A DNA stretch of 64,000 bases from IMGVR_UViG_3300027749_002876:310001-374000, one strand, 5' to 3'. Counted from the stretch's first letter, positions 46,776 to 61,143 are shown. Translations and numbers: made by a program. Notes: a model not told the origin generated them from the sequence alone.

Positions 46776-47756
46776 ATGAAACATTTTATATACAAGACAA
46801 CTCACACAAACGGAAAATACTACATAGGTAGACATAGCACTACTAACCTTGAAGATGGATATCTAGGTTCAGGAAAGTGGGTATCACAAATCAAAAAGAA
46901 GGATAAGTTAGTCCGAGAAATAGTTGAGTTTGTAGATTCATTTGAGGAACTAATAATAAAAGAAGATGAATATTTAGCAGAACATTACGGTAAACCTAAC
47001 TGTATGAATATGAGTAATAAAAGCACAGGCGCAGCCACTGGATTAGCTAATCCTATGACACGTGATGAAGTTAAATCAAAATTTCAAGGGGACAATCATT
47101 GGTCCCATAAGAATCCTGAAATGTTTGCAGAAAAACTAGCAGGAGATAATCATTGGATGAATAAAGATCCAGAACGAAAAGAAGATTTTATAAAAAACAA
47201 CCCCAACCTAGATGGTAGAAACGCAAAGGCAGCAATGAAAAACGGTAAACACAATAGTATCACTAACAATCCAAGTACTATCAACGCACTAAATGGTACT
47301 CATCATTGGCAGAATGGTAAAGCGCCAAACTATGAAGGTAAGCTAAACAAGAAGTTGATTGAAGAAGGTCGTCATAACTTTTTAGGACCAGACACAAATC
47401 AAAAACGAATAGATGAGGGAACACACAACTTTGTAGGTTCAGCCGCAAATCTAAAGATGTTAGCAGAAGGTAAACATCCATCACAACGAAAGATGACTTG
47501 TAGTTGTGGTAAGACTGTTAGTAGTAGTATGTATAAAAGATGGCACGGAGATAACTGTAAAATGAAAGTAATAAAAATGAATTCAAGACAATATGAAAAA
47601 ATGCGTAATGAACAACTACGAGAAACAATGGAGAAAGCAGGCATAACAGATTATACAAATGTATGTCTAAGTGCAGACCAACAAGAATATGAAGTTACAC
47701 TAAAAGATGGAACAGAAGTTATTATTCCTAGTGGATTACCCTATCATTATGATTGA
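46776..47756 (+). mobile_element. Free-standing GIY-YIG (Seg-like) homing endonuclease gene, 326 aa
   Basis: FIYKTT...KYYIGRH......YLGSG; repeated G-x-H-(N/H/P)-(F/W) DNA-binding-like units; terminal CSCGK...RWHGDNCK motif. Confidence 0.9.
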
Positions 47757-47800: not shown

Positions 47801-47824
47801 AAGCACTATTCGTAGTGCTTTTTT
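47801..47824 (+). terminator. Rho-independent terminator with UUCG loop
   Basis: AAGCACTA-TTCG-TAGTGCTT-TTTT. Confidence 0.88.
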
Positions 47825-47868
47825 GTTATCTACATTATTTTGCTAAATACTTCAAAGGAAAACATACT

Positions 47869-48822
47869 ATGGAAATTACTGGTGGAATGACATTTTTAGG
47901 TGGTATGACGGTAACACAACAACCCCCACCCACAAATAAAGCTATTTTTGGATTTGGTGATACTGGGTCAGTAACAGCAATAACAAACCTAGTCAGCAAC
48001 ACTGGTGTAGTTGCTAATGATACAACAGGGGTTGGTACTGCTAGAAGCGGAGTAGCGGCCGCTGGTTATGGAACAGATAAAGCTATATTTGGTTATGGAT
48101 TAACCAGTATAAGTGTATCAATAACTAATCTTGTTTCTAACACAGGTGTGGTTGGTAATGATGTTACTGGAGTTGGTACTACTAGACAACAATTAGCAGC
48201 CGCAGGTTATGGCACTGATAAAGCTATATTTGGTTATGGTTATAATAATAGCAGTGGTGCTAAATCAACGACCAACTTAGTATCAAACACTGGTGTTGTT
48301 GCCACAGATACAACAGGTGTAGGTACTGCTAGATATGGAATAGCAGCATCCGGGTACGGTAGCTCCGGACAAGCAATATTTGGATATGGATATGCACCAG
48401 CACTCACACCAAGCTATACATCAATAACTAACCTAGTATCAAATACCGGTGTAGTAGCTACTGATACCACAGGTGTTGGTACTGTAAGACAATTTCCTGC
48501 TGCCGCAGGCTATGGCACAGATAAAGCTATATTTGGATATGGTCAAATTGGCAACCCGACCTACGCTTATGTATCGATGACTAATCTAGTCTCAAATACT
48601 GGTGTTGTTGCAACAGATACGACAGGTGTCGGCACGATTAGAACTGGGCTGGCAGCAGCCATATACGGTAGTTCTGGGCAAGCAATATTTGGATATGGTA
48701 CAAATGCTAGTAATCAATCAATAACCAACTTAGTAAGTAATACTGGTGTCGTTGCTACTGATACGACTGGGGTTGGCACTGCTAGAAGTTATCTTGCAGC
48801 CGCAAATTACGGACTAGCATAA
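47869..48822 (+). CDS. Six-bladed Kelch-like beta-propeller protein 1 (~317 aa)
   Basis: Six repeats of AIFGYG-loop-TNLVSNTGVVATDTTGVGTAR-xxx-AAxGYG. Start reassigned to ATG 47869 (AAGGA RBS, GCTAAATA promoter at 47842-47849). Confidence 0.8.
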   Translation: MEITGGMTFLGGMTVTQQPPPTNKAIFGFGDTGSVTAITNLVSNTGVVANDTTGVGTARSGVAAAGYGTDKAIFGYGLTSISVSITNLVSNTGVVGNDVTGVGTTRQQLAAAGYGTDKAIFGYGYNNSSGAKSTTNLVSNTGVVATDTTGVGTARYGIAASGYGSSGQAIFGYGYAPALTPSYTSITNLVSNTGVVATDTTGVGTVRQFPAAAGYGTDKAIFGYGQIGNPTYAYVSMTNLVSNTGVVATDTTGVGTIRTGLAAAIYGSSGQAIFGYGTNASNQSITNLVSNTGVVATDTTGVGTARSYLAAANYGLA

Positions 48823-48840
48823 AATAAAAGGAAATATATT

Positions 48841-49767
48841 ATGGACTTTACAGGTGGACTAACATTTACAGGTGGATTGAGTGTAACTCCTCAACCCCCG
48901 CCTTCAAGCAAGGCTATATTTGGATATGGTAATAACGATTCCGTTGATTTATCAATGACTAACTTAGTATCAAACACCGGTGTTGTTGCTACTGACACAA
49001 CGGGCGTTGGTACTGCAAGACAAAATTTATCGGCAACAACCTATGGTACTGATAAAGCTATTTTTGGTTATGGTGATGTTTCGGGTTCATACTCATCATT
49101 AACTAACCTAGTAAGTAATACCGGTGTTGTTGCTACTAATACTGCAGGTGTTGGCACTGCTAGAGGATATCGTTCGGCCGCAGTTTATGGTTCAAGTGGT
49201 CAAGCTATGTTTATTTATGGAGTTAATAATAACTCGATTAATTTGGTTAGTAACACAGGTGTGGTGTCTACAGACTCCGCAGGAGCAGGCTCTGGTAGAG
49301 CATCTACTTCAGCTGCCGGCTACGGCACAGACAAAGCTATTATTGGATTTGGATGGGACGGTAGTAGTGGTTATTTTTCAACAACCAATCTAGTATCAAA
49401 TACAGGTGTAGTAGCAGGTGATACTACCGGTGTAGCAACTGCTAGGGGATTTCTTTCAGCCGCAGGATATGGCACTGATAAAGCTATCTTTGGATATGGT
49501 CAAAGTAGTGGGTATTATTCAATAACTAACTTAGTAAGTAATACCGGTGTTATGGCTACTGACACTGCAGGAGTAGGTACTGCTAGAAGTAAGCTATCAG
49601 CCGCAATATATGACGTAGATAAAGCTATATTTGGATATGGTGATAAACCAGGTGGATTAACATCATTAACCAACAAAGTATCAAATACGGGCATTGTTGC
49701 TAGTGACACTACTGGAGTAGGCACTGCTAGAAAAGGATCGGCAGCGGCAGGTTACGGTTACGCATAA
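48841..49767 (+). CDS. Six-bladed Kelch-like beta-propeller protein 2 (308 aa)
   Basis: Six copies of the same repeat; MDFTGGLTFTGGLSVTPQPPP leader; AAGGA RBS. Confidence 0.8.
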   Translation: MDFTGGLTFTGGLSVTPQPPPSSKAIFGYGNNDSVDLSMTNLVSNTGVVATDTTGVGTARQNLSATTYGTDKAIFGYGDVSGSYSSLTNLVSNTGVVATNTAGVGTARGYRSAAVYGSSGQAMFIYGVNNNSINLVSNTGVVSTDSAGAGSGRASTSAAGYGTDKAIIGFGWDGSSGYFSTTNLVSNTGVVAGDTTGVATARGFLSAAGYGTDKAIFGYGQSSGYYSITNLVSNTGVMATDTAGVGTARSKLSAAIYDVDKAIFGYGDKPGGLTSLTNKVSNTGIVASDTTGVGTARKGSAAAGYGYA

Positions 49768-49800
49768 TCTAACAAACACAAAACAAAAGGATAATATATT

Positions 49801-50736
49801 ATGGATTTTACAGGTGGATTAACATTTACAGGTGGATTGAGTGTAACTCCTCAACCTCCTCCCCCTTCAAGCAAGGCTATATTTGGTTATGGATACATTA
49901 CATCAATAACTAATCTAGTATCAAATACAGGTGTAGTTGCTACTGATACTGCAGGTGTTGGTACTGCCAGAGGTGAACTTGCTGCCGCAGGATATGGAAC
50001 AGATAAAGCTATTTTTGGATTTGGCTTTGCATATGCCTGGATAAATACGACCAACCGAGTAAGTAATACAGGTGTTGTTGCCACTGATGGACAATCTGCT
50101 GGTACTGGCAGAAATATACTTGCTGCCGCAGGATATGGAACAGATAAAGCTATTTTTGGATTTGGCTTTTATTATAATAGCGGTGAGGGGTCTATCACCA
50201 CTAACGTGACCAACCTAGTAAGTAATACAGGTGTGGTTGCTAATAATACCACAGGTGTTGGTAGTGCTAGAAACAGCCTTGCTGCCACAGGTTATGGAAC
50301 TGATAAAGCTATGTTTGGATATGGCGGTGGAGGTGGTCCAACTAACTTAGTATCAAATACGGGTGTTGTAGCTACTGATGTATCCAGAGTTGGTACTGAT
50401 AGAGCATTACTCGCAGCCGCAGTCTATGGCACTGATAAAGCTATCTTTGGATATGGTACCGGTACCGCTTTATTTTCAGTGACCAACAAAGTATCAAACA
50501 CGGGTGTAGTAGCTACTGATACCACTGGTGTGGGTACTGCTAGATACGGATTAGCAGCCGCTGGGTACGGTGTTGATACTGCTATATTTGGATATGGAAA
50601 TATCGACCGTTTAAACGAAACCCTACCGGTATCAATGACCAATCTAGTATCAAACACCGGTGTAGTTGCTACAGACACAACTGGTGTCGGTACTGCTAGA
50701 TTTAAATTAGCAGCCGCAAGTTACGGCTTAGCATAA
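49801..50736 (+). CDS. Six-bladed Kelch-like beta-propeller protein 3 (311 aa)
   Basis: Six copies of the repeat; leader identical to protein 2 up to the proline linker. Confidence 0.8.
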   Translation: MDFTGGLTFTGGLSVTPQPPPPSSKAIFGYGYITSITNLVSNTGVVATDTAGVGTARGELAAAGYGTDKAIFGFGFAYAWINTTNRVSNTGVVATDGQSAGTGRNILAAAGYGTDKAIFGFGFYYNSGEGSITTNVTNLVSNTGVVANNTTGVGSARNSLAATGYGTDKAMFGYGGGGGPTNLVSNTGVVATDVSRVGTDRALLAAAVYGTDKAIFGYGTGTALFSVTNKVSNTGVVATDTTGVGTARYGLAAAGYGVDTAIFGYGNIDRLNETLPVSMTNLVSNTGVVATDTTGVGTARFKLAAASYGLA

Positions 50737-50799
50737 ACAAACAAATCAAAGTATATACACAGCCTTTTTTTGATAAATAATAGCAAAGGATAATACATT

Positions 50800-51735
50800 A
50801 TGGAAATTACTGGTGGAATGACATTTAGTGGTGGTATGGTTGTGACACAGCAACCTCCTCCCCCTTCAAATAAAGCTATTTTTGGATATGGTCTTATTAC
50901 CGCGGCGGTAACAGCAATAACCAATCTAGTATCAAATACAGGCGTTGTTGCTACTGATACAACTGGTGTTGGAACTACTAGACAAAATCTAGCGGCCGCG
51001 GGCTATGGCACTAACAAAGCTATATTTGGTTATGGTCAACCTAGTGGGATGACAAATATAACCAATCTAGTATCAAATACAGGCGTTGTTGCTACTGATA
51101 CAGCAGGTGTAGGCACTGCAAGACGCTTTCTTGCAGCCGCAGGTTATGGAAGTGATAAAGCTATATTTGGATACGGAGGACCTGATGGTGGTTATTATTC
51201 ACTAACCAACCTAGTAACAAATACTGGTGTTGTTGGCAATGATGTCACAGGTGTAGGCACCGGTCGATATGGATTAACAGCCTCAGTGTATGGTACCGAT
51301 AAGGCCATATTTGGATATGGGTTTAATGGTTCAGCAATGACAACAACAACTAACCTAGTATCAAATACGGGTGTAGTGTCTACTGATACTGCAGGTGCCG
51401 GCACAGCCAGATATCAGCTAGCAGCCGCAGGGTATGGAACTGATAAAGCTATATTTGGCTATGGAACCACTGACCAGACGAATGGTTTATCAATTACTAA
51501 TCTAGTAAGTAACACAGGTGTAGTTGCTACTAATACAACAGGTGTTGGAACTGCTAGATGGGGTCTTGCAGCCGCAAGTTATGGTGTTGATACTGCTATA
51601 TTTGGATATGGAAATGGTCCATCTTTTGTATCAATGACCAATAAAGTATCAAACACCGGTGTAGTAGCAACGGATACGACAGGAGTTGGTACTGCTAGAA
51701 GCCAACTTGCAGCCTCAAGTTACGGTTACGCATAA
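50800..51735 (+). CDS. Six-bladed Kelch-like beta-propeller protein 4 (311 aa)
   Basis: Six copies of the repeat; MEITGGMTF leader like protein 1; own late promoter GATAAATA (50772-50779). Confidence 0.8.
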   Translation: MEITGGMTFSGGMVVTQQPPPPSNKAIFGYGLITAAVTAITNLVSNTGVVATDTTGVGTTRQNLAAAGYGTNKAIFGYGQPSGMTNITNLVSNTGVVATDTAGVGTARRFLAAAGYGSDKAIFGYGGPDGGYYSLTNLVTNTGVVGNDVTGVGTGRYGLTASVYGTDKAIFGYGFNGSAMTTTTNLVSNTGVVSTDTAGAGTARYQLAAAGYGTDKAIFGYGTTDQTNGLSITNLVSNTGVVATNTTGVGTARWGLAAASYGVDTAIFGYGNGPSFVSMTNKVSNTGVVATDTTGVGTARSQLAASSYGYA

Positions 51736-51753
51736 TCTCACAAACACAAAAAC

Positions 51754-51776
51754 AAAGGCTCTACAGAGCCTTTTTT
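51754..51776 (+). terminator. Rho-independent terminator closing the propeller array
   Basis: AAAGGCTCT-AC-AGAGCCTTTTTT. Confidence 0.8.
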
Positions 51777-51808
51777 CTTATCTAAAATTTATTAGACTAT
51801 ATAATACT

Positions 51809-52186
51809 ATGATGATACACGCTCCAATCTCAATCGGTGAACTAATAGATAAAATCACTATATTAAAAATCAAGTCTATCTTAATTGTAGATACAATCAA
51901 ACTTAAAAACATAGAACAAGAACTACAACTATTAGAAGAACTAAAAGATAGTCTTAATTTAGATATTGACACACTTGAAGAACTACAGTCTAAGCTTTAT
52001 GGTGTAAACTTAGAGTTATGGCACATTGAGAACTATAAACGAGAATGTGAAAAGAATCAAACTTTTGATGGTAAATTCATTGACTCGGCACGACAAGTAT
52101 ATCTTAAAAACGATTTACGTGCTGAAATCAAACATAGTATCAACACAATGTTTGGTAGCACTATCGTTGAAGAAAAAAGCTATTAA
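51809..52186 (+). CDS. Conserved phage hypothetical protein (DUF6165-like), ~125 aa
   Basis: PISIGELIDKITILKIK...NLELWHIE...RE.E...F...ARQVYLKND.RAEIK. Start at 51809 or 51812, after TATAAT (51800-51805). Confidence 0.65.
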   Translation: MMIHAPISIGELIDKITILKIKSILIVDTIKLKNIEQELQLLEELKDSLNLDIDTLEELQSKLYGVNLELWHIENYKRECEKNQTFDGKFIDSARQVYLKNDLRAEIKHSINTMFGSTIVEEKSY

Positions 52187-52548
52187 ATTGTTAAATCAGT
52201 ATCAATAGTTATATCTAAAATACTCTTACGCTTTTCTTTTAGTTTCTTTTGGTACACTCTATTACAATTGGCACACAATGTTTTAAGATTACGTTTATCT
52301 TTATTCTTCTTGTCACCGTCTTTATATACAATGTCTAATTGACATTTATCTTCTGGTATAAAACCACACTTCTCACACTTGTCTTTCTTCTGTAACAAGT
52401 AACCATACGTGCTGTTATATGCACCTTTAGCACAATCAACACAATACTTGTGCCACTTGGTAAAGCCATGTTTACTCACACCGTTAGGTTTTGCTAATGA
52501 TACTCTACAATGAGAACATAGGGGTCTGTTTGGCTGTCGTGTAAGCAT
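52183..52548 (-). CDS. Zn-finger protein with degenerate HNH-like domain, 121 aa
   Basis: CSHC, HKYCVDC, CEKC...QLDIVYKDG...NLKTLCANCNR; HNH-like scaffold lacking the catalytic His. Confidence 0.7.
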   Translation of the reverse strand: MLTRQPNRPLCSHCRVSLAKPNGVSKHGFTKWHKYCVDCAKGAYNSTYGYLLQKKDKCEKCGFIPEDKCQLDIVYKDGDKKNKDKRNLKTLCANCNRVYQKKLKEKRKSILDITIDTDLTI

Positions 52549-52644
52549 TATATATTTAATAAAAAAGCACTAATAGGATTTTTTTTAGTGGGAAGAAATT
52601 ATACCTAACTGATAAATATATAATAGACAATATTAGGATGAACA

Positions 52645-55600
52645 ATGGCATTTGAACCTTTCGGTTTAGTCGGTGGTGTAACAGTAGGAATACCACCAAT
52701 ATTGGTAATAGACAGTAACGGCAATGTAACTTCTAACCGTGGTAACATTGCGAACCTATCTACGGCAGTTATTACTTCATCAGGTAATATTACTGCCCCG
52801 TTCTTTATTGGTAATGTCGTTGGAAATGTATCTGGAAATTTCGTAGTTCCTGGCACAAATACCAGTGTTATCTTTAACCAAGAAGGTAATGCAGGGGCCA
52901 GTGATAATCTACAGTTTAACTATTCTACAAATGTATTAAGTTTAACGGGTAATCTAACTGTTACTAATATTTTAACAGATAATTATCTATACGCTAACGG
53001 TGCTCCGTACGTATTTGCGGCACAAGCGTCCGGAACTAATACACAGATACAATTCAATACAGCTGGATTACTAGATGCTAGCGCAAACTTAACATTTAAT
53101 AATAGTACTCAAACATTTGCTACGAATAATATTTCTGCTACTACAGCGGTAATTACTACGATTCAATCAGCCAATGTAACAGCTACCGGTAATGTAGTAG
53201 CCGCAAATGTTATTGCTAATTTTATTGGTAATTTATCTAATGCTAATAGTGTTTCAGCTAACTATTTTACTGGCGTACTAACAACAAATGCACAACCTAA
53301 CATTACCAGTGTTGGTACATTATCAGGATTAACACTAGCAGGGAACATTATTCCAGCCGCTGATAATCTATATAATTTGGGTAGCAATGTAGCTCGCTGG
53401 AACGATTTATACTTAAGTGGCAATACTATCTATTTAGGTAATGCTACGATAGAAGCAAATAGTACAGCTTTAATTTTCACTAATCCAAATGGTTCTAATT
53501 ATGTATTTGGTGGAAATGATTTCTCAATAACCGGAAATATATCAGCCGGCGGCAATTTAAGTATAGGGAACATATCTGCTGGTAACTTAGTATCAGCTAA
53601 TTTTCTAACAGGTAGACTAACTACTGAATCACAACCTAATATTACTACAGTTGGAGTATTGGGTAATTTATCAGTAGCTGGTAATATCAATACTGGTAAC
53701 ATCAGTGCTGTCACTAGAGTTACAGCAAATCAAATATCTGGACTATTAATTACAGGTTATCAACCAAATGTTACCAGTGTTGGTACATTAGCATCATTGA
53801 ATGTAACTGGTAATATAACCACTACCAGTGGTGTATTTATTGGTAATGGTAGTGGACTATCTCAAATAGTTGCAGCCAACATTGTTGGATCTGTACCAAA
53901 TGCCGCTTATGCTAGTAATGCAGGTTTTGCTACACAGGCTGCACAGTCCGATTTAGCAAGTGTAGCCAATATTGCTAGTGTAGCTAATACAGCAACAACT
54001 GCGGGAACTGTTACAACTAACGCACAACCTAACATTACAAGTGTTGGCACATTAACTACATTAAATGTTACAGGTAATGTCAATGCTAATAATTTTGTAG
54101 GTAATTTTGTAGGTAATATTACCAGTGCAAATTTTGCATATTATGCAGGCAACGTTACTGTAGCTTCTCAACCCAATATTACAAGTGTTGGTACATTAAC
54201 TTCATTAGCTGTAAATGGACCCATAACAGCCGCAAATATCACTGCTAACACAGGTAGATTTACTGGTAATGGTAGTGGACTATCTCAATTACAGGCCTCA
54301 AATATTGTTGGTACTGTTGCTAATGCAACATATGCGGTGACAGCCGGAACAACAACAACTGCCGGTACTGTTACTACAAATGCACAGTCTAATATTACTT
54401 CTGTTGGTACACTAACATCACTGGCGGTAACTGGAAACATTGCTGGTGGAAATATAGCTGGTGGAAATTTAGTTTCTGCTACATACTTTACTGGAACAAT
54501 TTTAACTAGCTCACAACCCAATATTACTAATGTTGGAACACTATCATTATTAAATGTAACTGGAAATGTAACAGCCGCAAATATTACTGCCAGTACTGGT
54601 AGATTTGCAGGTAATGGCAGTGGATTAACAAACTTATCTGGGGCAAATGTAGTTGGTACTGTTGCTAATGCAACATATGCATTAACAGCTGGGTTTACTA
54701 CAACAGCCGGAACAGTAACAGATAATGCACAACCCAATATCACTTCAGTTGGTACACTACTATCACTAGCTGTAAGTGGAAATATTACTGGTTTAAATGT
54801 AGCTGGTGGTAATTTAGTTTCTGCTAATTATGTAACCGGAACATTAACAACTCAGGCTCAACCAAATATTACGTCAGTTGGCACACTTTCATTATTAAAT
54901 GTAACTGGAAACGTAACATCAGCAAATATTACAGTTACTACTGGTAGATTTGCAGGTAATGGTAGTGGTTTATCTCAACTTTCTGGGGCAAATGTAGTTG
55001 GTGATGTAGCTAATGCAACATATGCAACAAATGCAGGTAGTTCAACTACTGCAGGCACAGTAACAACTAATGCACAACCTAACATTACAAGTGTTGGTAC
55101 ATTAACATCATTAGATGTAACTGGAAATATTACTGGTACAAATGTAACTGGTGCTAACTTAGTTTCTGCTAATTTCTTAACCGGTACATTAACAACAAAT
55201 TCTCAACCTAACATCACTTCAGTTGGAACATTAACTTCACTTGCTGTAAGTGGAACTATTACAGCCGCAAATATTACTGCTACTACTGGTAAATTCACAG
55301 GTAATGGTAGAGGATTATCACAATTAACAGGATCTAACGTTATTGGCACAGTGGCCAATGCGACATATGCACTTAATGCAGGTAATTCAATTACATCTAA
55401 TACTGTAATTGATAACGCACAACCCAATATTACGTCAGTTGGAACATTAACTTCATTGATAGTAAGTGGAAATATTACTGGAGCTAATATTACTGGTGGT
55501 AATTTAGTTTCTGCTAATTTCTTAACCGGTACATTAACAACAAGTGCTCAATCTAACATTACAAGTACAGGTACATTATCATTATTAAACGTAAGTGGTA

Positions 55601-58002
55601 ATATTACAGCTACAAACATTACTGCTAATACTGGTAGATTTGCGGGTAATGGTAGTGGACTAAGTCAATTAACAGGTGCTAACGTTTTAGGTACCGTGGC
55701 TAATGCAACATTTGCAGTATCAGCTGGATCATCAAATACGTCCGGTACTGTAACAACCAATACTCAACCTAACATTACAAGTGTTGGTACACTAACTACT
55801 TTAACAAGTTCAGGTAATATTACAGCACCGTATTTTATTGGTAATGTTGTTGGAAATATATCTGGGAATTTTGTAGTTCCCGGTACAAACACCAGTGTTA
55901 TCTTTAATCAAGAAGGCAATGCAGGCGCAAGTGATGCGCTTAGGTTTAACTATTCTAGCAATGTTTTAACAGCAAATGGTAATATTATTGCTACTTATTT
56001 TATTGGTAATGGTAGTGGATTATCACAACTAACTGGTTCTAATGTAGTTGGAACAGTAGCCAATGCAACGTTCTCGGTATCAGCAGGGTCATCAAATACA
56101 GCAGGTACTGTTACTACAAATGCACAGCCTAACATTACTTCAGTTGGAACATTAACATCATTAGTTGTAACTGGAAATATTACTGGTGCTAATGTAGCAG
56201 GTGGTAATTTAGTTTCTGCTAATTATGTTACTGGTACACTAACAACAAATTATCAACCTAACATTACAAGTGTTGGTACATTGACTGGTTTGTCAAGTTC
56301 AGGTAATATCACAGCTCCATACTTCTTTGGTAATTTAATAGGTAATATAGATGATGCTAATTATGCATACTATGCAGGAAATGTAGTTAATCCATTACAG
56401 CCAAATATTACAACAGTGGGCATATTAACTAGTTTAAGTGTATCTGGTAATATTATAGGTGGTAACTTAGTAAGTGCTAATTTCTTAACTGGTACACTTA
56501 CTACACAAACACAAGCTAATATACATACAGTTGGTAATTTAGAATTCTTAAATATTGACACAAGTTTACCAGGAGCCAATGGTAATATAACTTTTAATGG
56601 TAGTATGAGTGGTACTGGCCCGCAAAGTGATATTGATATTACCGGTGACCTTTATGTTAGTAACATCTATTCTACAATTGTAGCCGGAGTACTTAGTACA
56701 AATGAACAACCAAATGTAACATTAGTTGGTACATTAACAGAATTGACAGTACGAGGTCCTGTTGATTTAGGTAGTGTATCTAATTTAACAATTACAGGTG
56801 GTAATGCAAATTATGTATTGTCTACTAATGGTTCAGGTAATTTATCTTGGCAACCAGCAGGTGGTGGATCAGCCGGCGGAACTAACACTCAAGTGCAGTT
56901 TAATAATCTAGGTTTATTAGATGGTAATTCATCATTTACATTTAATAATACAACTAAGACACTAACTGTATTAGGAAATATTACATCAAATAGTACAATT
57001 CAAAGTAGTAGATTTATATCAAATGTAGCAAATGGAACTAGTCCTTTTGTAGTTACATCTACTACAAAAGTAGCAAATTTAAGTGTAGAAACTGCAAATA
57101 CTGCAACATTTGCAACCAGTTCAACAAATTCAAATGTTGCATTAACTGTAGCAAATGCATCACAACCTAACATTACTTCAGTTGGTACATTAACTGCACT
57201 AAATGTTAATGGTACAGGAAGTATTACAGGTAATATACGAGTAGGTAATTTAGATACAAATGGTACAATAGTATCAACTAATTCAACTGTTGTTGGAAAT
57301 GCAAATGTTAATGGTACTTTACAAGTAGGTAGTGTTGGACAATTAAGAGTGTTAGGTACTGTTAACACTGATGGATCTTCTAATGTGAATTTGGGCAATG
57401 TTTCAAATCTTCATATTAGCGGTGGAATAAACGGATACGTATTAAGCACTGACGGTGCAGGTAACTTAAGTTGGGCAACTGGTGGCGGTGGCGGTGGCAA
57501 CGGAGTACCTGGTGGGTCAAACACACAAGTACAGTATAATGACGGTGGTGTATTTGGCGGTAGTTCTTTCTTAACATTTAATGAAGTAACAAATACTTTA
57601 CAAGTAGCTGGTAATTTAGTAGCAAATAGCACTCAAGTTGGTGCCGGGATTTACAAATTTTCAACACAATATGTTTATTTTGCAACAACTACATCTACTG
57701 CATCCAGTCAAGTTTTATGGACTACTTTGGCATCAAATGTTTCAGGAGTAGACTTTCATATTATAGCAACAGATGTCACGGGTGCAACAAGACAGTCAGT
57801 TAAAATATCATCATTGTTATATGGAAATATTGTTGCTTTCAATGAATATGGTGGGTTACAAATAAATGGGGGAACTGGATCATTCTCAGTTGACTATAAT
57901 GCAGGTAATATTATTGTTCAACCAAGTGTACGATTGTTAGTTACTCCTGACTCGTCAAATTCAACAACTTACAAAATGACAATTACGGAGTATGCCCCAT
58001 GA
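52645..58002 (+). CDS. Long tail fibre-like protein with about 20 QPNITSVG repeats, 1785 aa
   Basis: G/N/T/A/S/V-rich repeats, NTQVQFN-type modules, globular C-terminal domain; late promoter 52611-52618. Confidence 0.85.
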   Translation: MAFEPFGLVGGVTVGIPPILVIDSNGNVTSNRGNIANLSTAVITSSGNITAPFFIGNVVGNVSGNFVVPGTNTSVIFNQEGNAGASDNLQFNYSTNVLSLTGNLTVTNILTDNYLYANGAPYVFAAQASGTNTQIQFNTAGLLDASANLTFNNSTQTFATNNISATTAVITTIQSANVTATGNVVAANVIANFIGNLSNANSVSANYFTGVLTTNAQPNITSVGTLSGLTLAGNIIPAADNLYNLGSNVARWNDLYLSGNTIYLGNATIEANSTALIFTNPNGSNYVFGGNDFSITGNISAGGNLSIGNISAGNLVSANFLTGRLTTESQPNITTVGVLGNLSVAGNINTGNISAVTRVTANQISGLLITGYQPNVTSVGTLASLNVTGNITTTSGVFIGNGSGLSQIVAANIVGSVPNAAYASNAGFATQAAQSDLASVANIASVANTATTAGTVTTNAQPNITSVGTLTTLNVTGNVNANNFVGNFVGNITSANFAYYAGNVTVASQPNITSVGTLTSLAVNGPITAANITANTGRFTGNGSGLSQLQASNIVGTVANATYAVTAGTTTTAGTVTTNAQSNITSVGTLTSLAVTGNIAGGNIAGGNLVSATYFTGTILTSSQPNITNVGTLSLLNVTGNVTAANITASTGRFAGNGSGLTNLSGANVVGTVANATYALTAGFTTTAGTVTDNAQPNITSVGTLLSLAVSGNITGLNVAGGNLVSANYVTGTLTTQAQPNITSVGTLSLLNVTGNVTSANITVTTGRFAGNGSGLSQLSGANVVGDVANATYATNAGSSTTAGTVTTNAQPNITSVGTLTSLDVTGNITGTNVTGANLVSANFLTGTLTTNSQPNITSVGTLTSLAVSGTITAANITATTGKFTGNGRGLSQLTGSNVIGTVANATYALNAGNSITSNTVIDNAQPNITSVGTLTSLIVSGNITGANITGGNLVSANFLTGTLTTSAQSNITSTGTLSLLNVSGNITATNITANTGRFAGNGSGLSQLTGANVLGTVANATFAVSAGSSNTSGTVTTNTQPNITSVGTLTTLTSSGNITAPYFIGNVVGNISGNFVVPGTNTSVIFNQEGNAGASDALRFNYSSNVLTANGNIIATYFIGNGSGLSQLTGSNVVGTVANATFSVSAGSSNTAGTVTTNAQPNITSVGTLTSLVVTGNITGANVAGGNLVSANYVTGTLTTNYQPNITSVGTLTGLSSSGNITAPYFFGNLIGNIDDANYAYYAGNVVNPLQPNITTVGILTSLSVSGNIIGGNLVSANFLTGTLTTQTQANIHTVGNLEFLNIDTSLPGANGNITFNGSMSGTGPQSDIDITGDLYVSNIYSTIVAGVLSTNEQPNVTLVGTLTELTVRGPVDLGSVSNLTITGGNANYVLSTNGSGNLSWQPAGGGSAGGTNTQVQFNNLGLLDGNSSFTFNNTTKTLTVLGNITSNSTIQSSRFISNVANGTSPFVVTSTTKVANLSVETANTATFATSSTNSNVALTVANASQPNITSVGTLTALNVNGTGSITGNIRVGNLDTNGTIVSTNSTVVGNANVNGTLQVGSVGQLRVLGTVNTDGSSNVNLGNVSNLHISGGINGYVLSTDGAGNLSWATGGGGGGNGVPGGSNTQVQYNDGGVFGGSSFLTFNEVTNTLQVAGNLVANSTQVGAGIYKFSTQYVYFATTTSTASSQVLWTTLASNVSGVDFHIIATDVTGATRQSVKISSLLYGNIVAFNEYGGLQINGGTGSFSVDYNAGNIIVQPSVRLLVTPDSSNSTTYKMTITEYAP

Positions 58003-58047: not shown

Positions 58048-61000
58048 ATGGCAATTAAACCATTTAACTCGGTCGCTGGCTTCTCAGTTGGAGAAATACC
58101 AGCCAACGTTGTATTAGCAAATGGTGACATAATTACCGGCAACATACAAGCTAATGCAAATATAACTGCTAATGGTAACATTACAGCTAACTTCTTTTTG
58201 GGTAACGGTGCTTACTTAACAGGTATTGATGCTACTAGTATTCAAAACGGTAATAGTAATGTCAAAGTTTATGCTAATGCAAACATAGCAATTAGTTCTG
58301 CAGGAAACGCAAACGTAGCCATTGTGACTGGCACAGGACTTATTGTAGCCGGCACATTCAGTGCATCCGGCAATGCTACTGCAGGTAATTTAAGTACAGT
58401 TGGTAATGTAAGTTCAGGTAACTTAATAGCAACTGGATTATTAAGCGTAATAGGTAATGCTAATGTTGGAAACATTGGTGCTTACAATGGTACATTTACT
58501 ACTATAACAGGAACACTCACAACTAACGCACAGCCTAATATTACAAGTGTTGGTGCATTAGCAAGTGTATCAATCATTGGTAATGCTAATATTGGCAATA
58601 TTGGATCAGCTGGTGTAATTACTGCAGTGGGCAATATTGGTGCAGGAAACATATCAACAACTGGATTAATAACAGTAGCTGGTAATGCCAACATAGGTAA
58701 TATTGGTACAGGTGGATTTATTACTGCTACTGGTAATATTACCGGTAGCAATTTAATCACAGCAGGAAATACAACTACTTCTAATGCAACAGTTAATTTA
58801 GAATTATCAGGTAACACAGCAAACTTTACAGGAAACGTATACGCACCAAACTTCATTGGTAACGTAGTTGGTAATATTTCTGGTAACATTGTCATTCCTG
58901 GAGCTAATACAGGTGTTGTATTTAACGATCAAGGAAATGCTAATACAAGCACAGCGTTTACATTTAATAAAATATCAAATGCAGTATCAATAAGTGGTAA
59001 CATCACTGCCGCTAACATATCAACCGGTGGCTTAATTACTGCGACTGGTAATATCACCGGTGCTAATTTAATAACAGGTGGACTAATTACTGCTACTGGT
59101 AACATTACTGGTGCTAATATAATAACTGGTGGTATAGTAACTGCCACCGGTAATGGTACATTTGGCAACATTAGCACAGCTGGATTAATTACTATTACTG
59201 GTAATGTAACTGGTGGTAACTTAACTACAGGTGGTTCACTGTCTGTAACGGGTAACGCTAACGTAGGTAATTTGGGCGCTACAAATCTAGTATCAACAGT
59301 AGTAACTGCATCAGGTAATATCACCGGTGGCAACTTAACTACAGGTGGAGTATTAACTGTAAATGGTACAGCAGATAGTCTTATTGCAGGCAATTTAAAT
59401 ATCACTGGTAAATGGATAAACAATGTAGGTTATCCAGTACTGGTAACTGATGCAGCCTCAAAACAATATGTAGATAACATGGTATCAAGTGGTATCAGTT
59501 ATCACCAACCAGTCAATGTTGCAACTACAACCACTCTAGCAATAGCTACTAGCGGTACTACTACATATAACTCACCAAATGGTGCGGCAAATGGTATTGG
59601 TGCTTATATCAGTACAACAGGTACATATAATTTAATTGATGGTGCTAATGTACAAACTGTAGGCACACGCATCTTAGTTAAAGATGAAGCTAATGCTACA
59701 TGGAATGGCGTTTACACATATGCCAACACAACAGCTATTGTACGCTCAACTGATGCAGACGAGTATGGTCCAGATAGTACAGAACAATTAAGTATCAATG
59801 ATTACTTTTTTACTCAAGGTGGTATAGTTAATATAGGTACTGGTTTTGTAGTTAGTTCTCCGCCTGGAGTAATTATATTTGGTACTTCAAATATCACATT
59901 TAGTATATTCAGTGGATCTCAAGTATATACTGCTGGAACTGGTATTAATATTGTAGGCACTGTAATCAGCGCAAATGCAAGTCAAACACAAGTTACAGCA
60001 GTCGGTACATTAACTTCATTGAGTGTGTCAGGTAATTCTAATATTGGTAATATTGGTACAGGGGTAGTTACTGCAACCGGTAATGGTACATTCGCTAATA
60101 TTAGTACAGGTGGATTAATTACTGCAATCGGTAATATCACCGGTGCTAACGTCATAACAGGTGGATTGATTACTGCTACTGGTAACATCACTGGTGGTAA
60201 TATTATAACAGCCGGCATTGTTTCTGCAACTGGTAATGGTACATTTGGTAATATTAGTACAACTGGATCAGGTGGAAATATTACTGGTGCTAATGTAGTA
60301 TCAGCAAATACATTCACTGCTACTGCTAATATTACCGGTGGTAATATTATTACTGGTGGTATTATCAGTGCATCTGGTAACCTAACATCATTAAATGCTA
60401 ATTTAGGTAACTTAGCTACAGCAAATTTTATAAACGTATCAAGCAATTTAAATGTTACTAATACAGCAAATGTAGGTAATCTACGTACAGACCATCTATT
60501 GTATGCAAACGGTCAACCTTGGGATTTACAAGAAGCTGCCGGCTCTAATAGACAGATTCAGTTTAATGATGGTAACAACAACTTTGCCGCAAATGCTAAT
60601 CTTACATATGATTATGTTACTAGCAATTTAACAGTTATTGGTAACGTTATTGCTACCACTTTTGTTGGTAATGTATCTGGTAATATTTCAGGTAATATTG
60701 TTATCCCTGGTGCTAACACAGGTGTTGTATTTAATGACAACGGCAATGCCAATACAAGCACAGCGTTTACATTTAATAAAGTATCAAATGTAGTAGCTCT
60801 TTCAGGAAATCTTACTCTTGGTACTACTACAATTGCAACAGGAACTACAACAACTACTTCAATTACTGCTAATCAAACCATTGTACAATTTAGTACAACT
60901 GGTATAGCGGCTATGGAGTTTTTAGTTAAGGGTGTAGATTCTACTGGTTCTAAATATAGTGTGTCAACTGTTACCGCAGTAACAAATGGATCAACAGTCG

Positions 61001-61143
61001 ATTATGTAACATATGCAACAGCATCTTTAAACGCAACAACAGGCTCATTAGCAGTTAATGTAGTAGGCGGCAATGTAGCATTGCAAGTTACTCCAGCAAC
61101 TAGTAATAGTACAGTTTGGACAACACAAGTGAGATTTATTTAA
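58048..61143 (+). CDS. Tail fibre-like protein with GNIT/TGG repeats, 1031 aa
   Basis: Repeats of GGLITATGNITG; DAASKQYVD fibre motif; C-terminal domain similar to that of the 1785-aa fibre; late promoter 58019-58026. Confidence 0.85.
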   Translation: MAIKPFNSVAGFSVGEIPANVVLANGDIITGNIQANANITANGNITANFFLGNGAYLTGIDATSIQNGNSNVKVYANANIAISSAGNANVAIVTGTGLIVAGTFSASGNATAGNLSTVGNVSSGNLIATGLLSVIGNANVGNIGAYNGTFTTITGTLTTNAQPNITSVGALASVSIIGNANIGNIGSAGVITAVGNIGAGNISTTGLITVAGNANIGNIGTGGFITATGNITGSNLITAGNTTTSNATVNLELSGNTANFTGNVYAPNFIGNVVGNISGNIVIPGANTGVVFNDQGNANTSTAFTFNKISNAVSISGNITAANISTGGLITATGNITGANLITGGLITATGNITGANIITGGIVTATGNGTFGNISTAGLITITGNVTGGNLTTGGSLSVTGNANVGNLGATNLVSTVVTASGNITGGNLTTGGVLTVNGTADSLIAGNLNITGKWINNVGYPVLVTDAASKQYVDNMVSSGISYHQPVNVATTTTLAIATSGTTTYNSPNGAANGIGAYISTTGTYNLIDGANVQTVGTRILVKDEANATWNGVYTYANTTAIVRSTDADEYGPDSTEQLSINDYFFTQGGIVNIGTGFVVSSPPGVIIFGTSNITFSIFSGSQVYTAGTGINIVGTVISANASQTQVTAVGTLTSLSVSGNSNIGNIGTGVVTATGNGTFANISTGGLITAIGNITGANVITGGLITATGNITGGNIITAGIVSATGNGTFGNISTTGSGGNITGANVVSANTFTATANITGGNIITGGIISASGNLTSLNANLGNLATANFINVSSNLNVTNTANVGNLRTDHLLYANGQPWDLQEAAGSNRQIQFNDGNNNFAANANLTYDYVTSNLTVIGNVIATTFVGNVSGNISGNIVIPGANTGVVFNDNGNANTSTAFTFNKVSNVVALSGNLTLGTTTIATGTTTTTSITANQTIVQFSTTGIAAMEFLVKGVDSTGSKYSVSTVTAVTNGSTVDYVTYATASLNATTGSLAVNVVGGNVALQVTPATSNSTVWTTQVRFI

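What the first reader, a model, noticed from the sequence alone, without database searches (positions are those of the whole stretch)
47869..51760. All four combinations of two N-termini and two C-termini: active recombinational shuffling in the propeller array
Seen: leaders are type A (MEITGGMTF, genes 1 and 4) or type B (MDFTGGLTF, genes 2 and 3). Ends are YGLA (genes 1 and 3) or YGYA (genes 2 and 4), giving A-LA, B-YA, B-LA and A-YA. The DNA after genes 2 and 4 is nearly identical (ggttacgcataatct..caaacacaaaa.caaa.gg). Genes 3 and 4 share a YGVDTAIFGYGN...VSMTN last blade. Gene 3 has a near-exact ~50-nt internal duplicate (~49978 and ~50119). After gene 3 only the right half of the terminator found after gene 4 (cagcc-T7) seems to remain. 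Inference: unequal crossing-over or gene conversion through the conserved framework swaps blades between paralogues, a possible RT-independent route to diversification.
Basis: partly seen in the sequence, partly recalled or inferred. Interest (0 to 1): 0.62.

Follow-up and report, generated by a model that had tools for sequence, protein, structure and literature searches.

The report
Old propeller gene family, not active shuffling
The four neighbouring genes are real, but they are old, well-diverged members of a 17-copy family of six-bladed propeller (lectin-like) proteins in a 525-kb phage, and nothing shows that they are swapping blades with each other now.

Summary

The interpretation mostly fails.
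- The window lies in a 524,565-bp phage with 17 copies of this family at 8 loci. Public data hold more than 2,200 relatives.
- The "C-terminal type" is one codon, and that codon varies freely across the family.
- The DNA shared after genes 2 and 4 is a family-wide cassette-boundary motif.
- YGVDTAIFGYG occurs in 5 of 16 full-length copies (a sixth has YGLDTAIFGYG).
- The four genes are only 66-72% identical in DNA, and their bodies form a star tree.
- PHI is not significant, and the longest tract shared between them outside the leader is 33 nt.
- Two other assemblies carry the same array at 100% and 99.99% identity.

Some recombination signals are real, but they are of other kinds.
- Long exact tracts are 20-30 times enriched between blades of the same gene.
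- Leaders are a separate module, also found on other adhesin-type domains.
- The locus holds 1, 3, 4 or 5 copies in close relatives, and none of those copies is an orthologue.

The proteins model as six-bladed Kelch/PLL-lectin-like propellers with hypervariable loops. They are probably late-expressed virion adhesins.

The parts
46776..47756 (+). GIY-YIG-type homing endonuclease gene between the major capsid gene and the array
   Evidence: phrog_314 homing endonuclease, E=1.9e-24. Weak Pfam GIY-YIG hit. Relatives carry homing endonucleases of other families in the same slot.
47801..47826 (+). Intrinsic terminator closing the endonuclease gene, upstream of gene 1
   Evidence: 8-bp stem plus T-run. 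-12.1 kcal/mol, z=-5.4.
47842..47849 (+). GCTAAATA, a weak variant of the GATAAATA late-promoter-like motif, 19 nt before the gene 1 start
   Evidence: Its function is inferred only from the family-wide pattern.
47869..48822 (+). Gene 1 (c09): 317 aa, MEITGG leader, Pro-rich linker, six propeller units, ends YGLA
48841..49767 (+). Gene 2 (c10): 308 aa, MDFTGG leader, six units, ends YGYA. No promoter motif of its own; 18-nt spacer with a ribosome-binding site.
49768..49790 (+). CA-rich 3' motif (TCTAACAAACACAAAACAAAAGG) that runs into the ribosome-binding site of gene 3. This is a family-wide cassette boundary.
   Evidence: The same motif follows c03, c04, c05, c06, c10 and c12 at four loci.
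49801..50736 (+). Gene 3 (c11): 311 aa, MDFTGG leader, six units, ends YGLA
   Evidence: Its closest paralogue overall is c06, at another locus, with 74% nt identity.
49977..50028 (+). First copy of the exact 52-nt repeat (framework of unit 1 of gene 3)
50118..50169 (+). Second copy of the exact 52-nt repeat (unit 2 of gene 3), read as an intragenic conversion tract
   Evidence: Enrichment of such tracts within genes is shown.
50748..50771 (+). Decayed terminator after gene 3. It aligns with the gene 4 terminator, but the left arm is mutated and no hairpin forms.
   Evidence: 0 kcal/mol. Not called by the terminator scan. Sequence.
50772..50779 (+). GATAAATA late-promoter-like motif 20 nt before the gene 4 start
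   Evidence: Genome-wide, 34 of 77 GATAAATA sites are followed by a ribosome-binding site, ATG and ORF, against 0-7% for 12 permuted controls. The motif precedes many fibre-like genes.
50800..51735 (+). Gene 4 (c12): 311 aa, MEITGG leader, six units, ends YGYA; the copy that was modelled
50917..50961 (+). First copy of an exact 45-nt intragenic repeat in gene 4 (the second copy is at 51058-51102)
51736..51779 (+). CA-rich 3' motif followed by the intact terminator of the array
   Evidence: (-10.6 kcal/mol, z=-5.2)
52183..52548 (-). HNH endonuclease gene bounding the array on the far side; conserved in relatives
   Evidence: PHROG HNH hits. 75-80% aa identity in L024, L065 and L072.
52645..58002 (+). 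1785-aa repetitive fibre-like protein with GATAAATA at 52611-52618. It is the conserved neighbour of the array.

Best explanation
The four genes belong to a large, old multigene family: 17 copies in this 524,565-bp phage and thousands in public metagenomes.

Each protein has three parts. A leader of about 20 aa comes first, then a Pro-rich linker, then a six-bladed Kelch/PLL-lectin-like beta-propeller. The propeller framework is nearly invariant. Two patches per blade are hypervariable: the loop after FGYG and the two residues after GTAR.

The genes are arranged as cassettes. A cassette carries a GATAAATA late-promoter-like motif or a read-through spacer, a ribosome-binding site, the gene, a CA-rich 3' motif and usually a terminator. 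They lie beside giant fibre genes. I infer that they are late-expressed, virion-displayed adhesins that probably bind glycans. I also infer that the leader is the docking module and that the variable loops form the binding face.

The 'four combinations' pattern needs no recent recombination. Leader type is a real module shared by neighbouring genes. The C-end 'type' is a single fast-changing codon. The shared 3' DNA and the VDT blade are family-wide traits.

The family evolves by birth, death and replacement of whole cassettes between related phages. Short conversion tracts of 40-63 nt act mainly between blades of one gene.

Shown: the anatomy, family size, divergence levels, tract statistics and synteny. 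Inferred: virion display, glycan binding, the docking role of the leader, and a possible role of the flanking homing endonucleases in turnover.
For: Family size: 17 copies; more than 2,210 homologues; 511 loci in IMG/VR.

Fold:
- The AF2 model is all-beta.
- The top Foldseek hits are six-bladed Kelch domains, TM 0.72-0.80.
- The ESM Atlas model has pTM 0.89, with neighbours named PLL-like or Kelch.
- A profile of the family hits the Photorhabdus lectins PLL2 and PHL at E=2e-5 and 1e-4, with a repeated GTDxA motif.

Variability: framework identity is 81% aa, against 14.5% in the 28% of columns that are variable.

Adhesin context:
- Homologues occur fused to Mtd_N, fn3 and Laminin_G_3.
- The same leader sits on Gly_rich_2, fn3 and LamG proteins.
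- GATAAATA precedes the propeller genes and many fibre-like genes.

Age and lack of exchange among the four:
- DNA identity is 64-74% for all pairs.
- The share of identical codons at identical residues is 0.53-0.655, against 0.44 expected from codon usage.
- The body tree is a star.
- PHI p=0.15.
- No long tract is shared between genes of one array.
- The array is identical in L009 and L010.

Intragenic tracts.

Turnover:
- The locus holds 1, 3, 4 or 5 copies in relatives with 94-95% identical MCP.
- The c16 locus holds 1 to 3 copies.
- Syntenic copies sit at the paralogue baseline (identical-codon share 0.51-0.62), while the capsid and most flanking genes are at 0.69-0.77.
Against: - My own AF2 model has only moderate confidence (pLDDT 63).
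- No Pfam or PHROG family hits the four proteins directly.
- The Trp residues that bind sugar in PLL lectins are absent from the consensus, so glycan binding is not established.
- Virion location rests on gene context and a promoter-like motif only.
- A star tree with near-saturated silent sites cannot exclude ancient recombination among the four genes.
- The middle part weakly disfavours a gene 1 + gene 4 clade (p=0.047, uncorrected).
- The three assemblies carrying the same array may come from related samples, and consensus contigs hide rare variants.
Confidence: 0.7

Rival explanations
1. Unequal crossing-over or gene conversion through the conserved framework is now swapping blades and termini between the four paralogues and so diversifying them.
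For: - All four N/C combinations exist.
- The conserved framework offers homology.
- Genes 3 and 4 are somewhat more alike in unit 5: 76% over the unit, and 82-84% in 90-nt windows.
- Exact-tract evidence shows that conversion does happen in this family.
Against: - The paralogues are 66-72% identical, with no tract over 33 nt between them outside the leader.
- PHI is not significant.
- Site patterns are not clustered once codons and the leader are accounted for, p=0.15.
- Same-array gene pairs show no excess of long tracts, 0 of 456.
- All 16 full-length copies keep exactly six units, so there is no sign of unequal crossing-over.
- The array is identical in two other assemblies.
- The C-end marker is one codon, and the 3' flank is a family-wide motif.
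Confidence: 0.08
2. Ancient modular exchange. Leaders, up to the Pro-rich linker, were recombined onto different propeller bodies long ago. This produced the A-B-B-A leader order, independent of how the bodies are related, and nothing has happened since.
For: - The 5' part groups genes by leader and rejects clades seen in the middle part: c06+c08 p=0.0007, c07+c12 p=0.001.
- The middle part rejects the five MAD-leader genes as one clade, p=0.002.
- Across several arrays, leaders are 81-94% identical between neighbours while the bodies are at baseline.
- The same leader is found on unrelated C-terminal domains.
Against: - For the four genes themselves, the body data do not reject the leader groupings: A p=0.18, B p=0.41.
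- The clades tested were chosen after seeing the trees.
- Stronger purifying selection on the leader and its mRNA start region could raise identity without any exchange.
Confidence: 0.35
3. Targeted hypermutation by a diversity-generating retroelement or a similar system makes the variable loops.
For: Hypervariability is confined to short patches on a conserved scaffold. Some homologues carry the Mtd_N domain of the Bordetella phage tropism protein.
Against: - The genome has no reverse transcriptase.
- Loops differ in length, from 6 to 15 residues, not only by substitution.
- No template repeat was seen.
- The array is identical between assemblies.
Confidence: 0.02
4. Assembly artefact. Repeats were mis-joined, creating false chimeric genes.
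For: The sequence is a metagenomic contig with many paralogous repeats. The contig end repeats an internal 4.1-kb region at 99.6% identity.
Against: - Paralogues differ at about 30% of bases, far too much for assemblers to confuse them.
- The longest shared tracts are 63 nt or less.
- All four frames are open and have the same architecture.
- Two other contigs give the same array.
Confidence: 0.02

Closest known systems
Kelch-repeat six-bladed beta-propellers (KLHL12, KLHL17, Keap1 Kelch domains; Kelch-like proteins of jumbo phages such as BcepSaruman, RP12 and CBB)
   Same: The predicted fold matches: six four-stranded blades with a period of about 47 aa, TM 0.72-0.80. In Kelch domains the loop after the GG doublet and the loop that carries the conserved Arg both lie on the ligand-binding face (my knowledge of Kelch architecture). 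The two hypervariable patches here sit at the corresponding sequence positions. Kelch-like proteins of other large phages appear among the structural matches, and other matches from large phages are annotated as virion structural proteins.
   Different: No Pfam Kelch family hits the proteins. Blade sequences are unusually uniform. There is no BTB or other eukaryote-type partner domain. The proteins carry a short leader and a Pro-rich linker instead.
PLL/PHL family of Photorhabdus beta-propeller lectins (PF26607 Beta-prop_PLL)
   Same: This is the only family of solved structures found by sequence profile, at E=2e-5 and 1e-4. The match is a GTDxA-plus-strand motif repeated in every blade. ESM Atlas neighbours carry PF26607. 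PLL lectins are multivalent sugar binders (PMC6943638).
   Different: PLL lectins have seven blades, and their sites lie between blades and use Trp stacking (PMC6943638). Here there are six blades and no conserved Trp, and variability lies in loops rather than in inter-blade grooves.
Fungal HNWD (het-d/het-e) WD40 repeats with high internal conservation
   Same: Here too the framework is conserved, the patches are hypervariable, and conversion tracts link blades of one gene.
   Different: HNWD repeats are 80-100% identical and vary in number (PMC11761791). Here blades average 73.5% nt identity (maximum 91%). The number of units is fixed at six in all 16 full-length copies. No exchange between paralogues is detectable.
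Modular phage receptor-binding proteins (conserved N-terminal anchor, exchangeable distal domain; phages carrying several such proteins)
   Same: One leader type is joined to different distal domains: propeller, Gly_rich_2, fn3 and Laminin_G. The genes sit beside giant fibre genes behind a shared late-promoter-like motif. Turnover between close relatives is rapid.
   Different: The anchor is only about 20 residues long. There are 17 paralogues of one distal fold in a single genome. No virion or host data exist.

Membership tests
Kelch-type six-bladed beta-propeller (fold class) | Six blades of four antiparallel strands closing a ring | tested here: met
   All-beta model with repeated strand pattern. 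The 50 listed Foldseek matches are nearly all six-bladed Kelch domains or Kelch-derived designs, TM 0.67-0.81. Six NLVSNTG units plus an N-terminal half-unit in all 16 full-length copies.
Kelch-type six-bladed beta-propeller (fold class) | Match to Pfam Kelch sequence models | tested here: not met
   No Pfam family at E<=0.1 for any of the four proteins.
PLL-like beta-propeller lectins (PF26607) | Detectable sequence homology to PLL/PHL repeats | tested here: met
   Profile A1 against PDB sequences: PLL2 E=2.2e-5, PHL E=1.3e-4, with a repeated GTDxA alignment. Atlas neighbour cluster with PF26607.
PLL-like beta-propeller lectins (PF26607) | Seven blades | tested here: not met
   Six units per protein. 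Best structural matches are six-bladed.
PLL-like beta-propeller lectins (PF26607) | Trp residues forming sugar sites between adjacent blades (PMC6943638) | tested here: not met
   No Trp in the family consensus. The PLL Trp positions align with F/Y/G or L/V here.
PLL-like beta-propeller lectins (PF26607) | Carbohydrate binding | not testable with these tools
   Needs glycan arrays or ITC on expressed protein.
Concerted-evolution repeat receptors (HNWD-type, high internal conservation) | Repeats 80-100% identical within a gene | tested here: not met
   Same-gene blade framework identity averages 73.7%; the maximum for any pair is 91%.
Concerted-evolution repeat receptors (HNWD-type, high internal conservation) | Repeat-number variation through unequal crossing-over | tested here: not met
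   All 16 full-length copies have six units. The one short copy (c15, 123 aa, 2 units) looks like a remnant.
Concerted-evolution repeat receptors (HNWD-type, high internal conservation) | Conversion tracts between repeats | tested here: met
   Within genes only: 11 of 241 against 10 of 4512 blade pairs share 35 nt or more, p=1e-9. Replicated in 63 genes of relatives, p=1e-22.
Concerted-evolution repeat receptors (HNWD-type, high internal conservation) | Exchange between paralogues | tested here: not met
   0 of 456 same-array blade pairs from different genes share 35 nt or more. PHI p=0.15 for the four genes.
Diversity-generating retroelement target | Reverse transcriptase in the genome | tested here: not met
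   No RVT_1 match in the 524,565-bp record; the search rang in 3 of the 14 control genomes.
Modular phage receptor-binding/adhesin proteins | Shared N-terminal module on different distal domains | tested here: met
   Same leader pattern on Gly_rich_2, Gly_rich_2+fn3 and Laminin_G_3 proteins in this genome and in relatives.
Modular phage receptor-binding/adhesin proteins | Presence in the virion and binding to the host surface | not testable with these tools
   Only context is available: fibre-gene neighbours and a late-promoter-like motif.
T4-type late transcription unit | TATAAATA-like element just upstream of late genes | tested here: inconclusive
   GATAAATA is followed by a ribosome-binding site and ORF at 34 of 77 sites, against 0-7% for controls. 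It precedes fibre-like genes. It is not enriched in raw count in the window. The late sigma factor was not sought, and there is no expression data.

The most novel reading that the evidence does not exclude
The family may be a germline repertoire of glycan-binding propellers that a huge phage keeps diverse without a reverse transcriptase. In this reading, short conversion tracts move variable patches between blades. Some tracts do span the two hypervariable residues after GTAR. Whole cassettes, bounded by conserved promoter, spacer and terminator motifs and flanked by homing endonuclease genes, are exchanged between loci and between co-infecting relatives. That would be a phage counterpart of fungal HNWD repeats or of antigenic-variation cassette systems.
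Probability: 0.15. Interest if true: 0.7.

Novelty: new variant of a known kind. Interest (0 to 1): 0.35.

Why it matters
The specific claim of ongoing blade shuffling among these four genes should not be carried forward.

What remains is still useful. A 525-kb phage devotes 17 genes to one rigid six-bladed scaffold with about nine hypervariable positions per blade. It places them behind a shared late-promoter-like motif next to giant fibre genes, and it replaces them faster than the surrounding genome. If they are virion adhesins, this is an unusually large set of paralogous receptor-binding modules and a clue to host range or surface attachment in uncultured freshwater megaphages. The excess of conversion tracts within genes is a clean, testable example of how a uniform repeat framework is maintained.

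Tried and rejected
- Pfam and PHROG scans of the four proteins gave nothing.
- DNA search of the array against GenBank phages found no match. The capsid flank matched only large Rak2/GAP32-type and Pseudomonas jumbo phages, at 67-69% identity.
I did not attempt it another way and did not use read laying.
- One scan of metagenome contigs with the 27-nt type-A leader found only the genome's own contig.
- IMG/VR scans with genes 1 and 4 found no orthologue at intermediate divergence. Hits were either 100% identical (the same phage) or at most 72%. Ortholog-based recombination tests were therefore impossible.
- Blade-position signal is almost absent: same-position blades are 74.9% identical, different-position blades 73.2%. 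Blade-by-blade trees would be uninformative, so I used tract statistics instead.
- Shared loop motifs at different blade positions, for example loop 5 of gene 1 and loop 1 of c16, looked like swaps. They are only 65-67% identical in DNA, so if they are homologous they are ancient.
- Clustering of site patterns at the nucleotide level (p=0.0002) disappeared once sites were merged by codon and the leader was removed (p=0.15).
- Literature searches found no description of this phage family.

Full report
**1. What is there.** Four tandem + strand genes lie at 47869-48822, 48841-49767, 49801-50736 and 50800-51735. They encode proteins of 317, 308, 311 and 311 aa. Each protein starts with a leader of about 20 residues: MEITGGMTF in genes 1 and 4, MDFTGGLTF in genes 2 and 3. 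A Pro-rich linker follows, then KAIFGYG, and then six units of about 47 residues. The unit consensus is NLVSNTGVVATDTTGVGTAR-xx-LAAAGYGTDKAIFGYG-loop. The last unit is cut short at YGLA (genes 1, 3) or YGYA (genes 2, 4).

- The DNA after genes 2 and 4 is alike.
- Genes 3 and 4 share YGVDTAIFGYGN...VSMTN.
- An exact 52-nt duplicate lies in gene 3 at 49977-50028 and 50118-50169.
- After gene 3 only a decayed copy of the terminator remains. It has no fold, against -10.6 kcal/mol for the hairpin after gene 4.

**2. The context changes the reading.** The window is bases 310001-374000 of a 524,565-bp virus record. Just upstream of the array are a scaffold gene, a Gp23-type major capsid gene (Pfam E=3e-98) and a GIY-YIG-type homing endonuclease gene. 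Downstream are a DUF6165 gene, an HNH endonuclease gene and a 1785-aa fibre-like gene.

The genome holds 17 members of the family at 8 places: 16 full-length copies and one of 123 aa. There are at least six leader types:
- MEITGG x2
- MDFTGG x3, one of them at another locus
- MDIGAG x2
- MADxxF x5
- M[EQ]FSG x2
- MxxTITGG x3

There are about nine different C-ends, including YGYA x5, YGLA x2 and YGLS x2. Public data hold more than 2,210 homologues and 511 matching stretches in IMG/VR.

**3. The three pieces of evidence for 'type' swapping are weak.**
- First, the C-terminal 'type' is one codon: CTA in gene 1, TTA in gene 3, TAC in genes 2 and 4. This position varies even between neighbours with the same leader.
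- Second, the DNA after genes 2 and 4 is a family-wide boundary motif, TCT[A/C]ACAAACA(C)AAAACAAAGG. The same motif follows c03, c04, c05 and c06 at other loci. It runs either into the next gene's ribosome-binding site or into a terminator.
- Third, YGVDTAIFGYG sits at the same blade position in 5 of 16 full-length copies, and a sixth has YGLDTAIFGYG.

**4. Tests for exchange among the four genes.**
- Pairwise DNA identity is 66-72%. By segment, only the leader stands out: 82% for genes 1/4 and 84% for genes 2/3.
- Informative sites split 34/22/36 among the three possible pairings. The leader alone gives 3/0/12, and the C-terminal unit gives 3/3/2.
- PHI gives p=0.15 for the four genes. For all 16 copies it is p=0.03, and it is not significant at third positions.
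- Apparent clustering of site patterns vanishes when sites are merged by codon and the leader is excluded, p=0.15.
- The body tree of the 16 copies is a star. Eleven of 13 inner branches are unsupported and end branches are about 0.3.
- AU tests on the body do not reject the A, B, YGLA or YGYA groupings (p=0.18-0.41). They do reject the four array genes as one clade, p=0.019.
- By partition, the 5' part supports the leader groups and rejects the alternatives (p=0.003-0.004).
- At identical residues, the share of identical codons is 0.53-0.655 for all pairs, against 0.44 expected from codon usage. The duplications are therefore old and of similar age.
- Two other IMG/VR contigs carry the whole array at 100% and 99.99% identity over 12.6 and 16.9 kb. 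They may come from related samples.

**5. Recombination that is visible.**

(a) Tracts within genes. Blade frameworks average 73.5% identity (sd 5%). Position in the gene matters hardly at all: 74.9% for the same position, 73.2% for different positions. Yet the longest exact tracts (63, 60, 57, 52, 45 nt) join blades of the same gene.
- Tracts of 35 nt or more occur in 11 of 241 intragenic blade pairs, against 10 of 4512 intergenic pairs (p=1e-9).
- None occurs among 456 pairs from different genes of one array.
- The pattern repeats in 63 independent genes from relatives. Twenty-one of them have an internal repeat of 40 nt or more, and the rate per blade pair is 31-fold higher than between genes (p=1e-22).
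- The 52-nt repeat in gene 3 and a 45-nt repeat in gene 4 are examples.
- Some tracts include the two variable residues after GTAR.

(b) Leader and body. The 5' part rejects clades that the middle part supports (p=0.0007 and p=0.001). The middle part rejects the five MAD-leader genes as one clade (p=0.002). These clades were chosen after seeing the trees. Across several arrays the first 90 nt are 81-94% identical between neighbours, while the bodies are at baseline. The same leader also heads proteins with Gly_rich_2, fn3 and Laminin_G_3 domains.

(c) Cassette turnover.
- In relatives whose capsid protein is 94-95% identical, the same slot holds 1, 3 or 5 propeller genes, sometimes with a Gly_rich_2 or a Laminin_G protein.
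- None of these genes is an orthologue of genes 1-4.
- At the c16 locus relatives have 2 or 3 copies against one here.
- Syntenic copies show identical-codon shares of 0.51-0.62, which is the paralogue baseline. The capsid and most flanking genes are at 0.69-0.77.
- Homing endonuclease genes of different families fill the slot between the capsid gene and the array in each relative. In T4 such genes promote local gene conversion (my knowledge). A role for them here is inference.

**6. What the proteins are.**
- My AF2 model is all-beta with moderate confidence, pLDDT 63 and pTM 0.61.
- Its best matches are six-bladed Kelch domains, TM 0.72-0.80.
- The ESM Atlas holds a model of the same protein with pTM 0.89. 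Its neighbours are named PLL-like beta-propeller or Kelch.
- A profile of the family reaches the Photorhabdus lectins PLL2 and PHL through a GTDxA motif repeated in each blade.
- Those lectins have seven blades and Trp-lined sites between blades (PMC6943638). Here there are six blades and no conserved Trp.
- Variability is confined to 28% of the alignment columns. These are 14.5% identical, against 81% in the framework. They are the loop after FGYG and the two residues after GTAR.
- In Kelch domains the corresponding loops form the ligand-binding face. That mapping is inferred and was not measured on coordinates.
- Homologues fused to Mtd_N, fn3 or Laminin_G_3, and structural matches from other large phages annotated as virion structural proteins, fit a surface adhesin role.

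**7. Expression signals.** GATAAATA is followed within 60 nt by a ribosome-binding site, ATG and an ORF at 34 of 77 sites. Twelve permuted control words reach 0-7%. The motif precedes 8 family copies, including gene 4, and many long fibre-like genes. Gene 1 has a weaker variant, and genes 2 and 3 have none. The likely transcription units are therefore genes 1-2-3, with read-through of the decayed terminator, and gene 4 with its own start. Intact terminators lie at 47801-47826 and 51754-51779.

**8. Verdict.** The idea of active shuffling between these paralogues is not supported. The family does bear marks of recombination, but of other kinds: conversion between blades of one gene, a modular leader, and replacement of whole cassettes between related phages. 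No reverse transcriptase is present.

**9. Limits.** No read-level population data could be obtained. No orthologues at intermediate divergence exist in the collections searched. Function is inferred from fold and context.

Noticed in passing
Genome G000 (outside the window): 17.8-152.6 kb against 512.1-399.2 kb: Fourteen blocks of 1.5 kb or more, at 69-86% identity, are mirrored in inverted, collinear order. It looks like an ancient inverted duplication of an arm of about 135 kb in this 525-kb phage. The capsid and scaffold genes are single copy.
   Followed up: partly
Genome G000: 520477-524565 against 172924-177012: The last 4,089 bp of the record repeat an internal region directly at 99.6% identity. 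This is either a recent duplication or an assembly join at the contig end.
   Followed up: no
L074:5866-9036 against G000 518090-521260: In one relative the capsid flank is 83% identical to this genome, but the next 3.2 kb is 98.7% identical to a distant locus of this genome (the c17 propeller locus). This points to a recent transfer between related phages.
   Followed up: partly
window 46776-47756 (+) and 52183-52548 (-): The array is bracketed by a GIY-YIG-type and an HNH-type homing endonuclease gene. Relatives carry endonucleases of other PHROG families in the first slot.
   Followed up: partly
window 50772, 52611, 58019 and genome-wide: GATAAATA behaves like a late-promoter element. It lies upstream of propeller genes and of many long fibre-like genes with related N-termini (MAFEPFGLVGG..., MA[LI][QK]PFNSV[SA]GFSVGE...).
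   Followed up: partly
window 52645-58002 and 58048-61143: A 1785-aa and a 1031-aa fibre-like protein carry many internal repeats (NAQPNITSVGTL...). A shifted self-match at 73.7% identity lies inside the first gene, at genome 364161-366156.
   Followed up: no
Genome G000 170790-171644 and 273073-275283; L024:9904-10752; L065:9965-10894; L074:5116-7110: Proteins with the same type of leader but other bodies: Gly_rich_2, Gly_rich_2 plus fn3, and three Laminin_G_3 domains.
   Followed up: yes
Genome G000 454912-455283: A 123-aa family member with the leader and only two units; probably a remnant.
   Followed up: no
window 48527-48565 (gene 1, loop 5) against genome copy c16, loop 1: Similar 13-residue loops (GNPT[YF]A.VSMT) occur at different blade positions in two genes, but they are only 65% identical in DNA. 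This is either an ancient blade rearrangement or convergence.
   Followed up: partly
window 1-30000 against 30000-64000: GC skew and AT skew change sign near 30 kb, matching a switch in coding strand.
   Followed up: no
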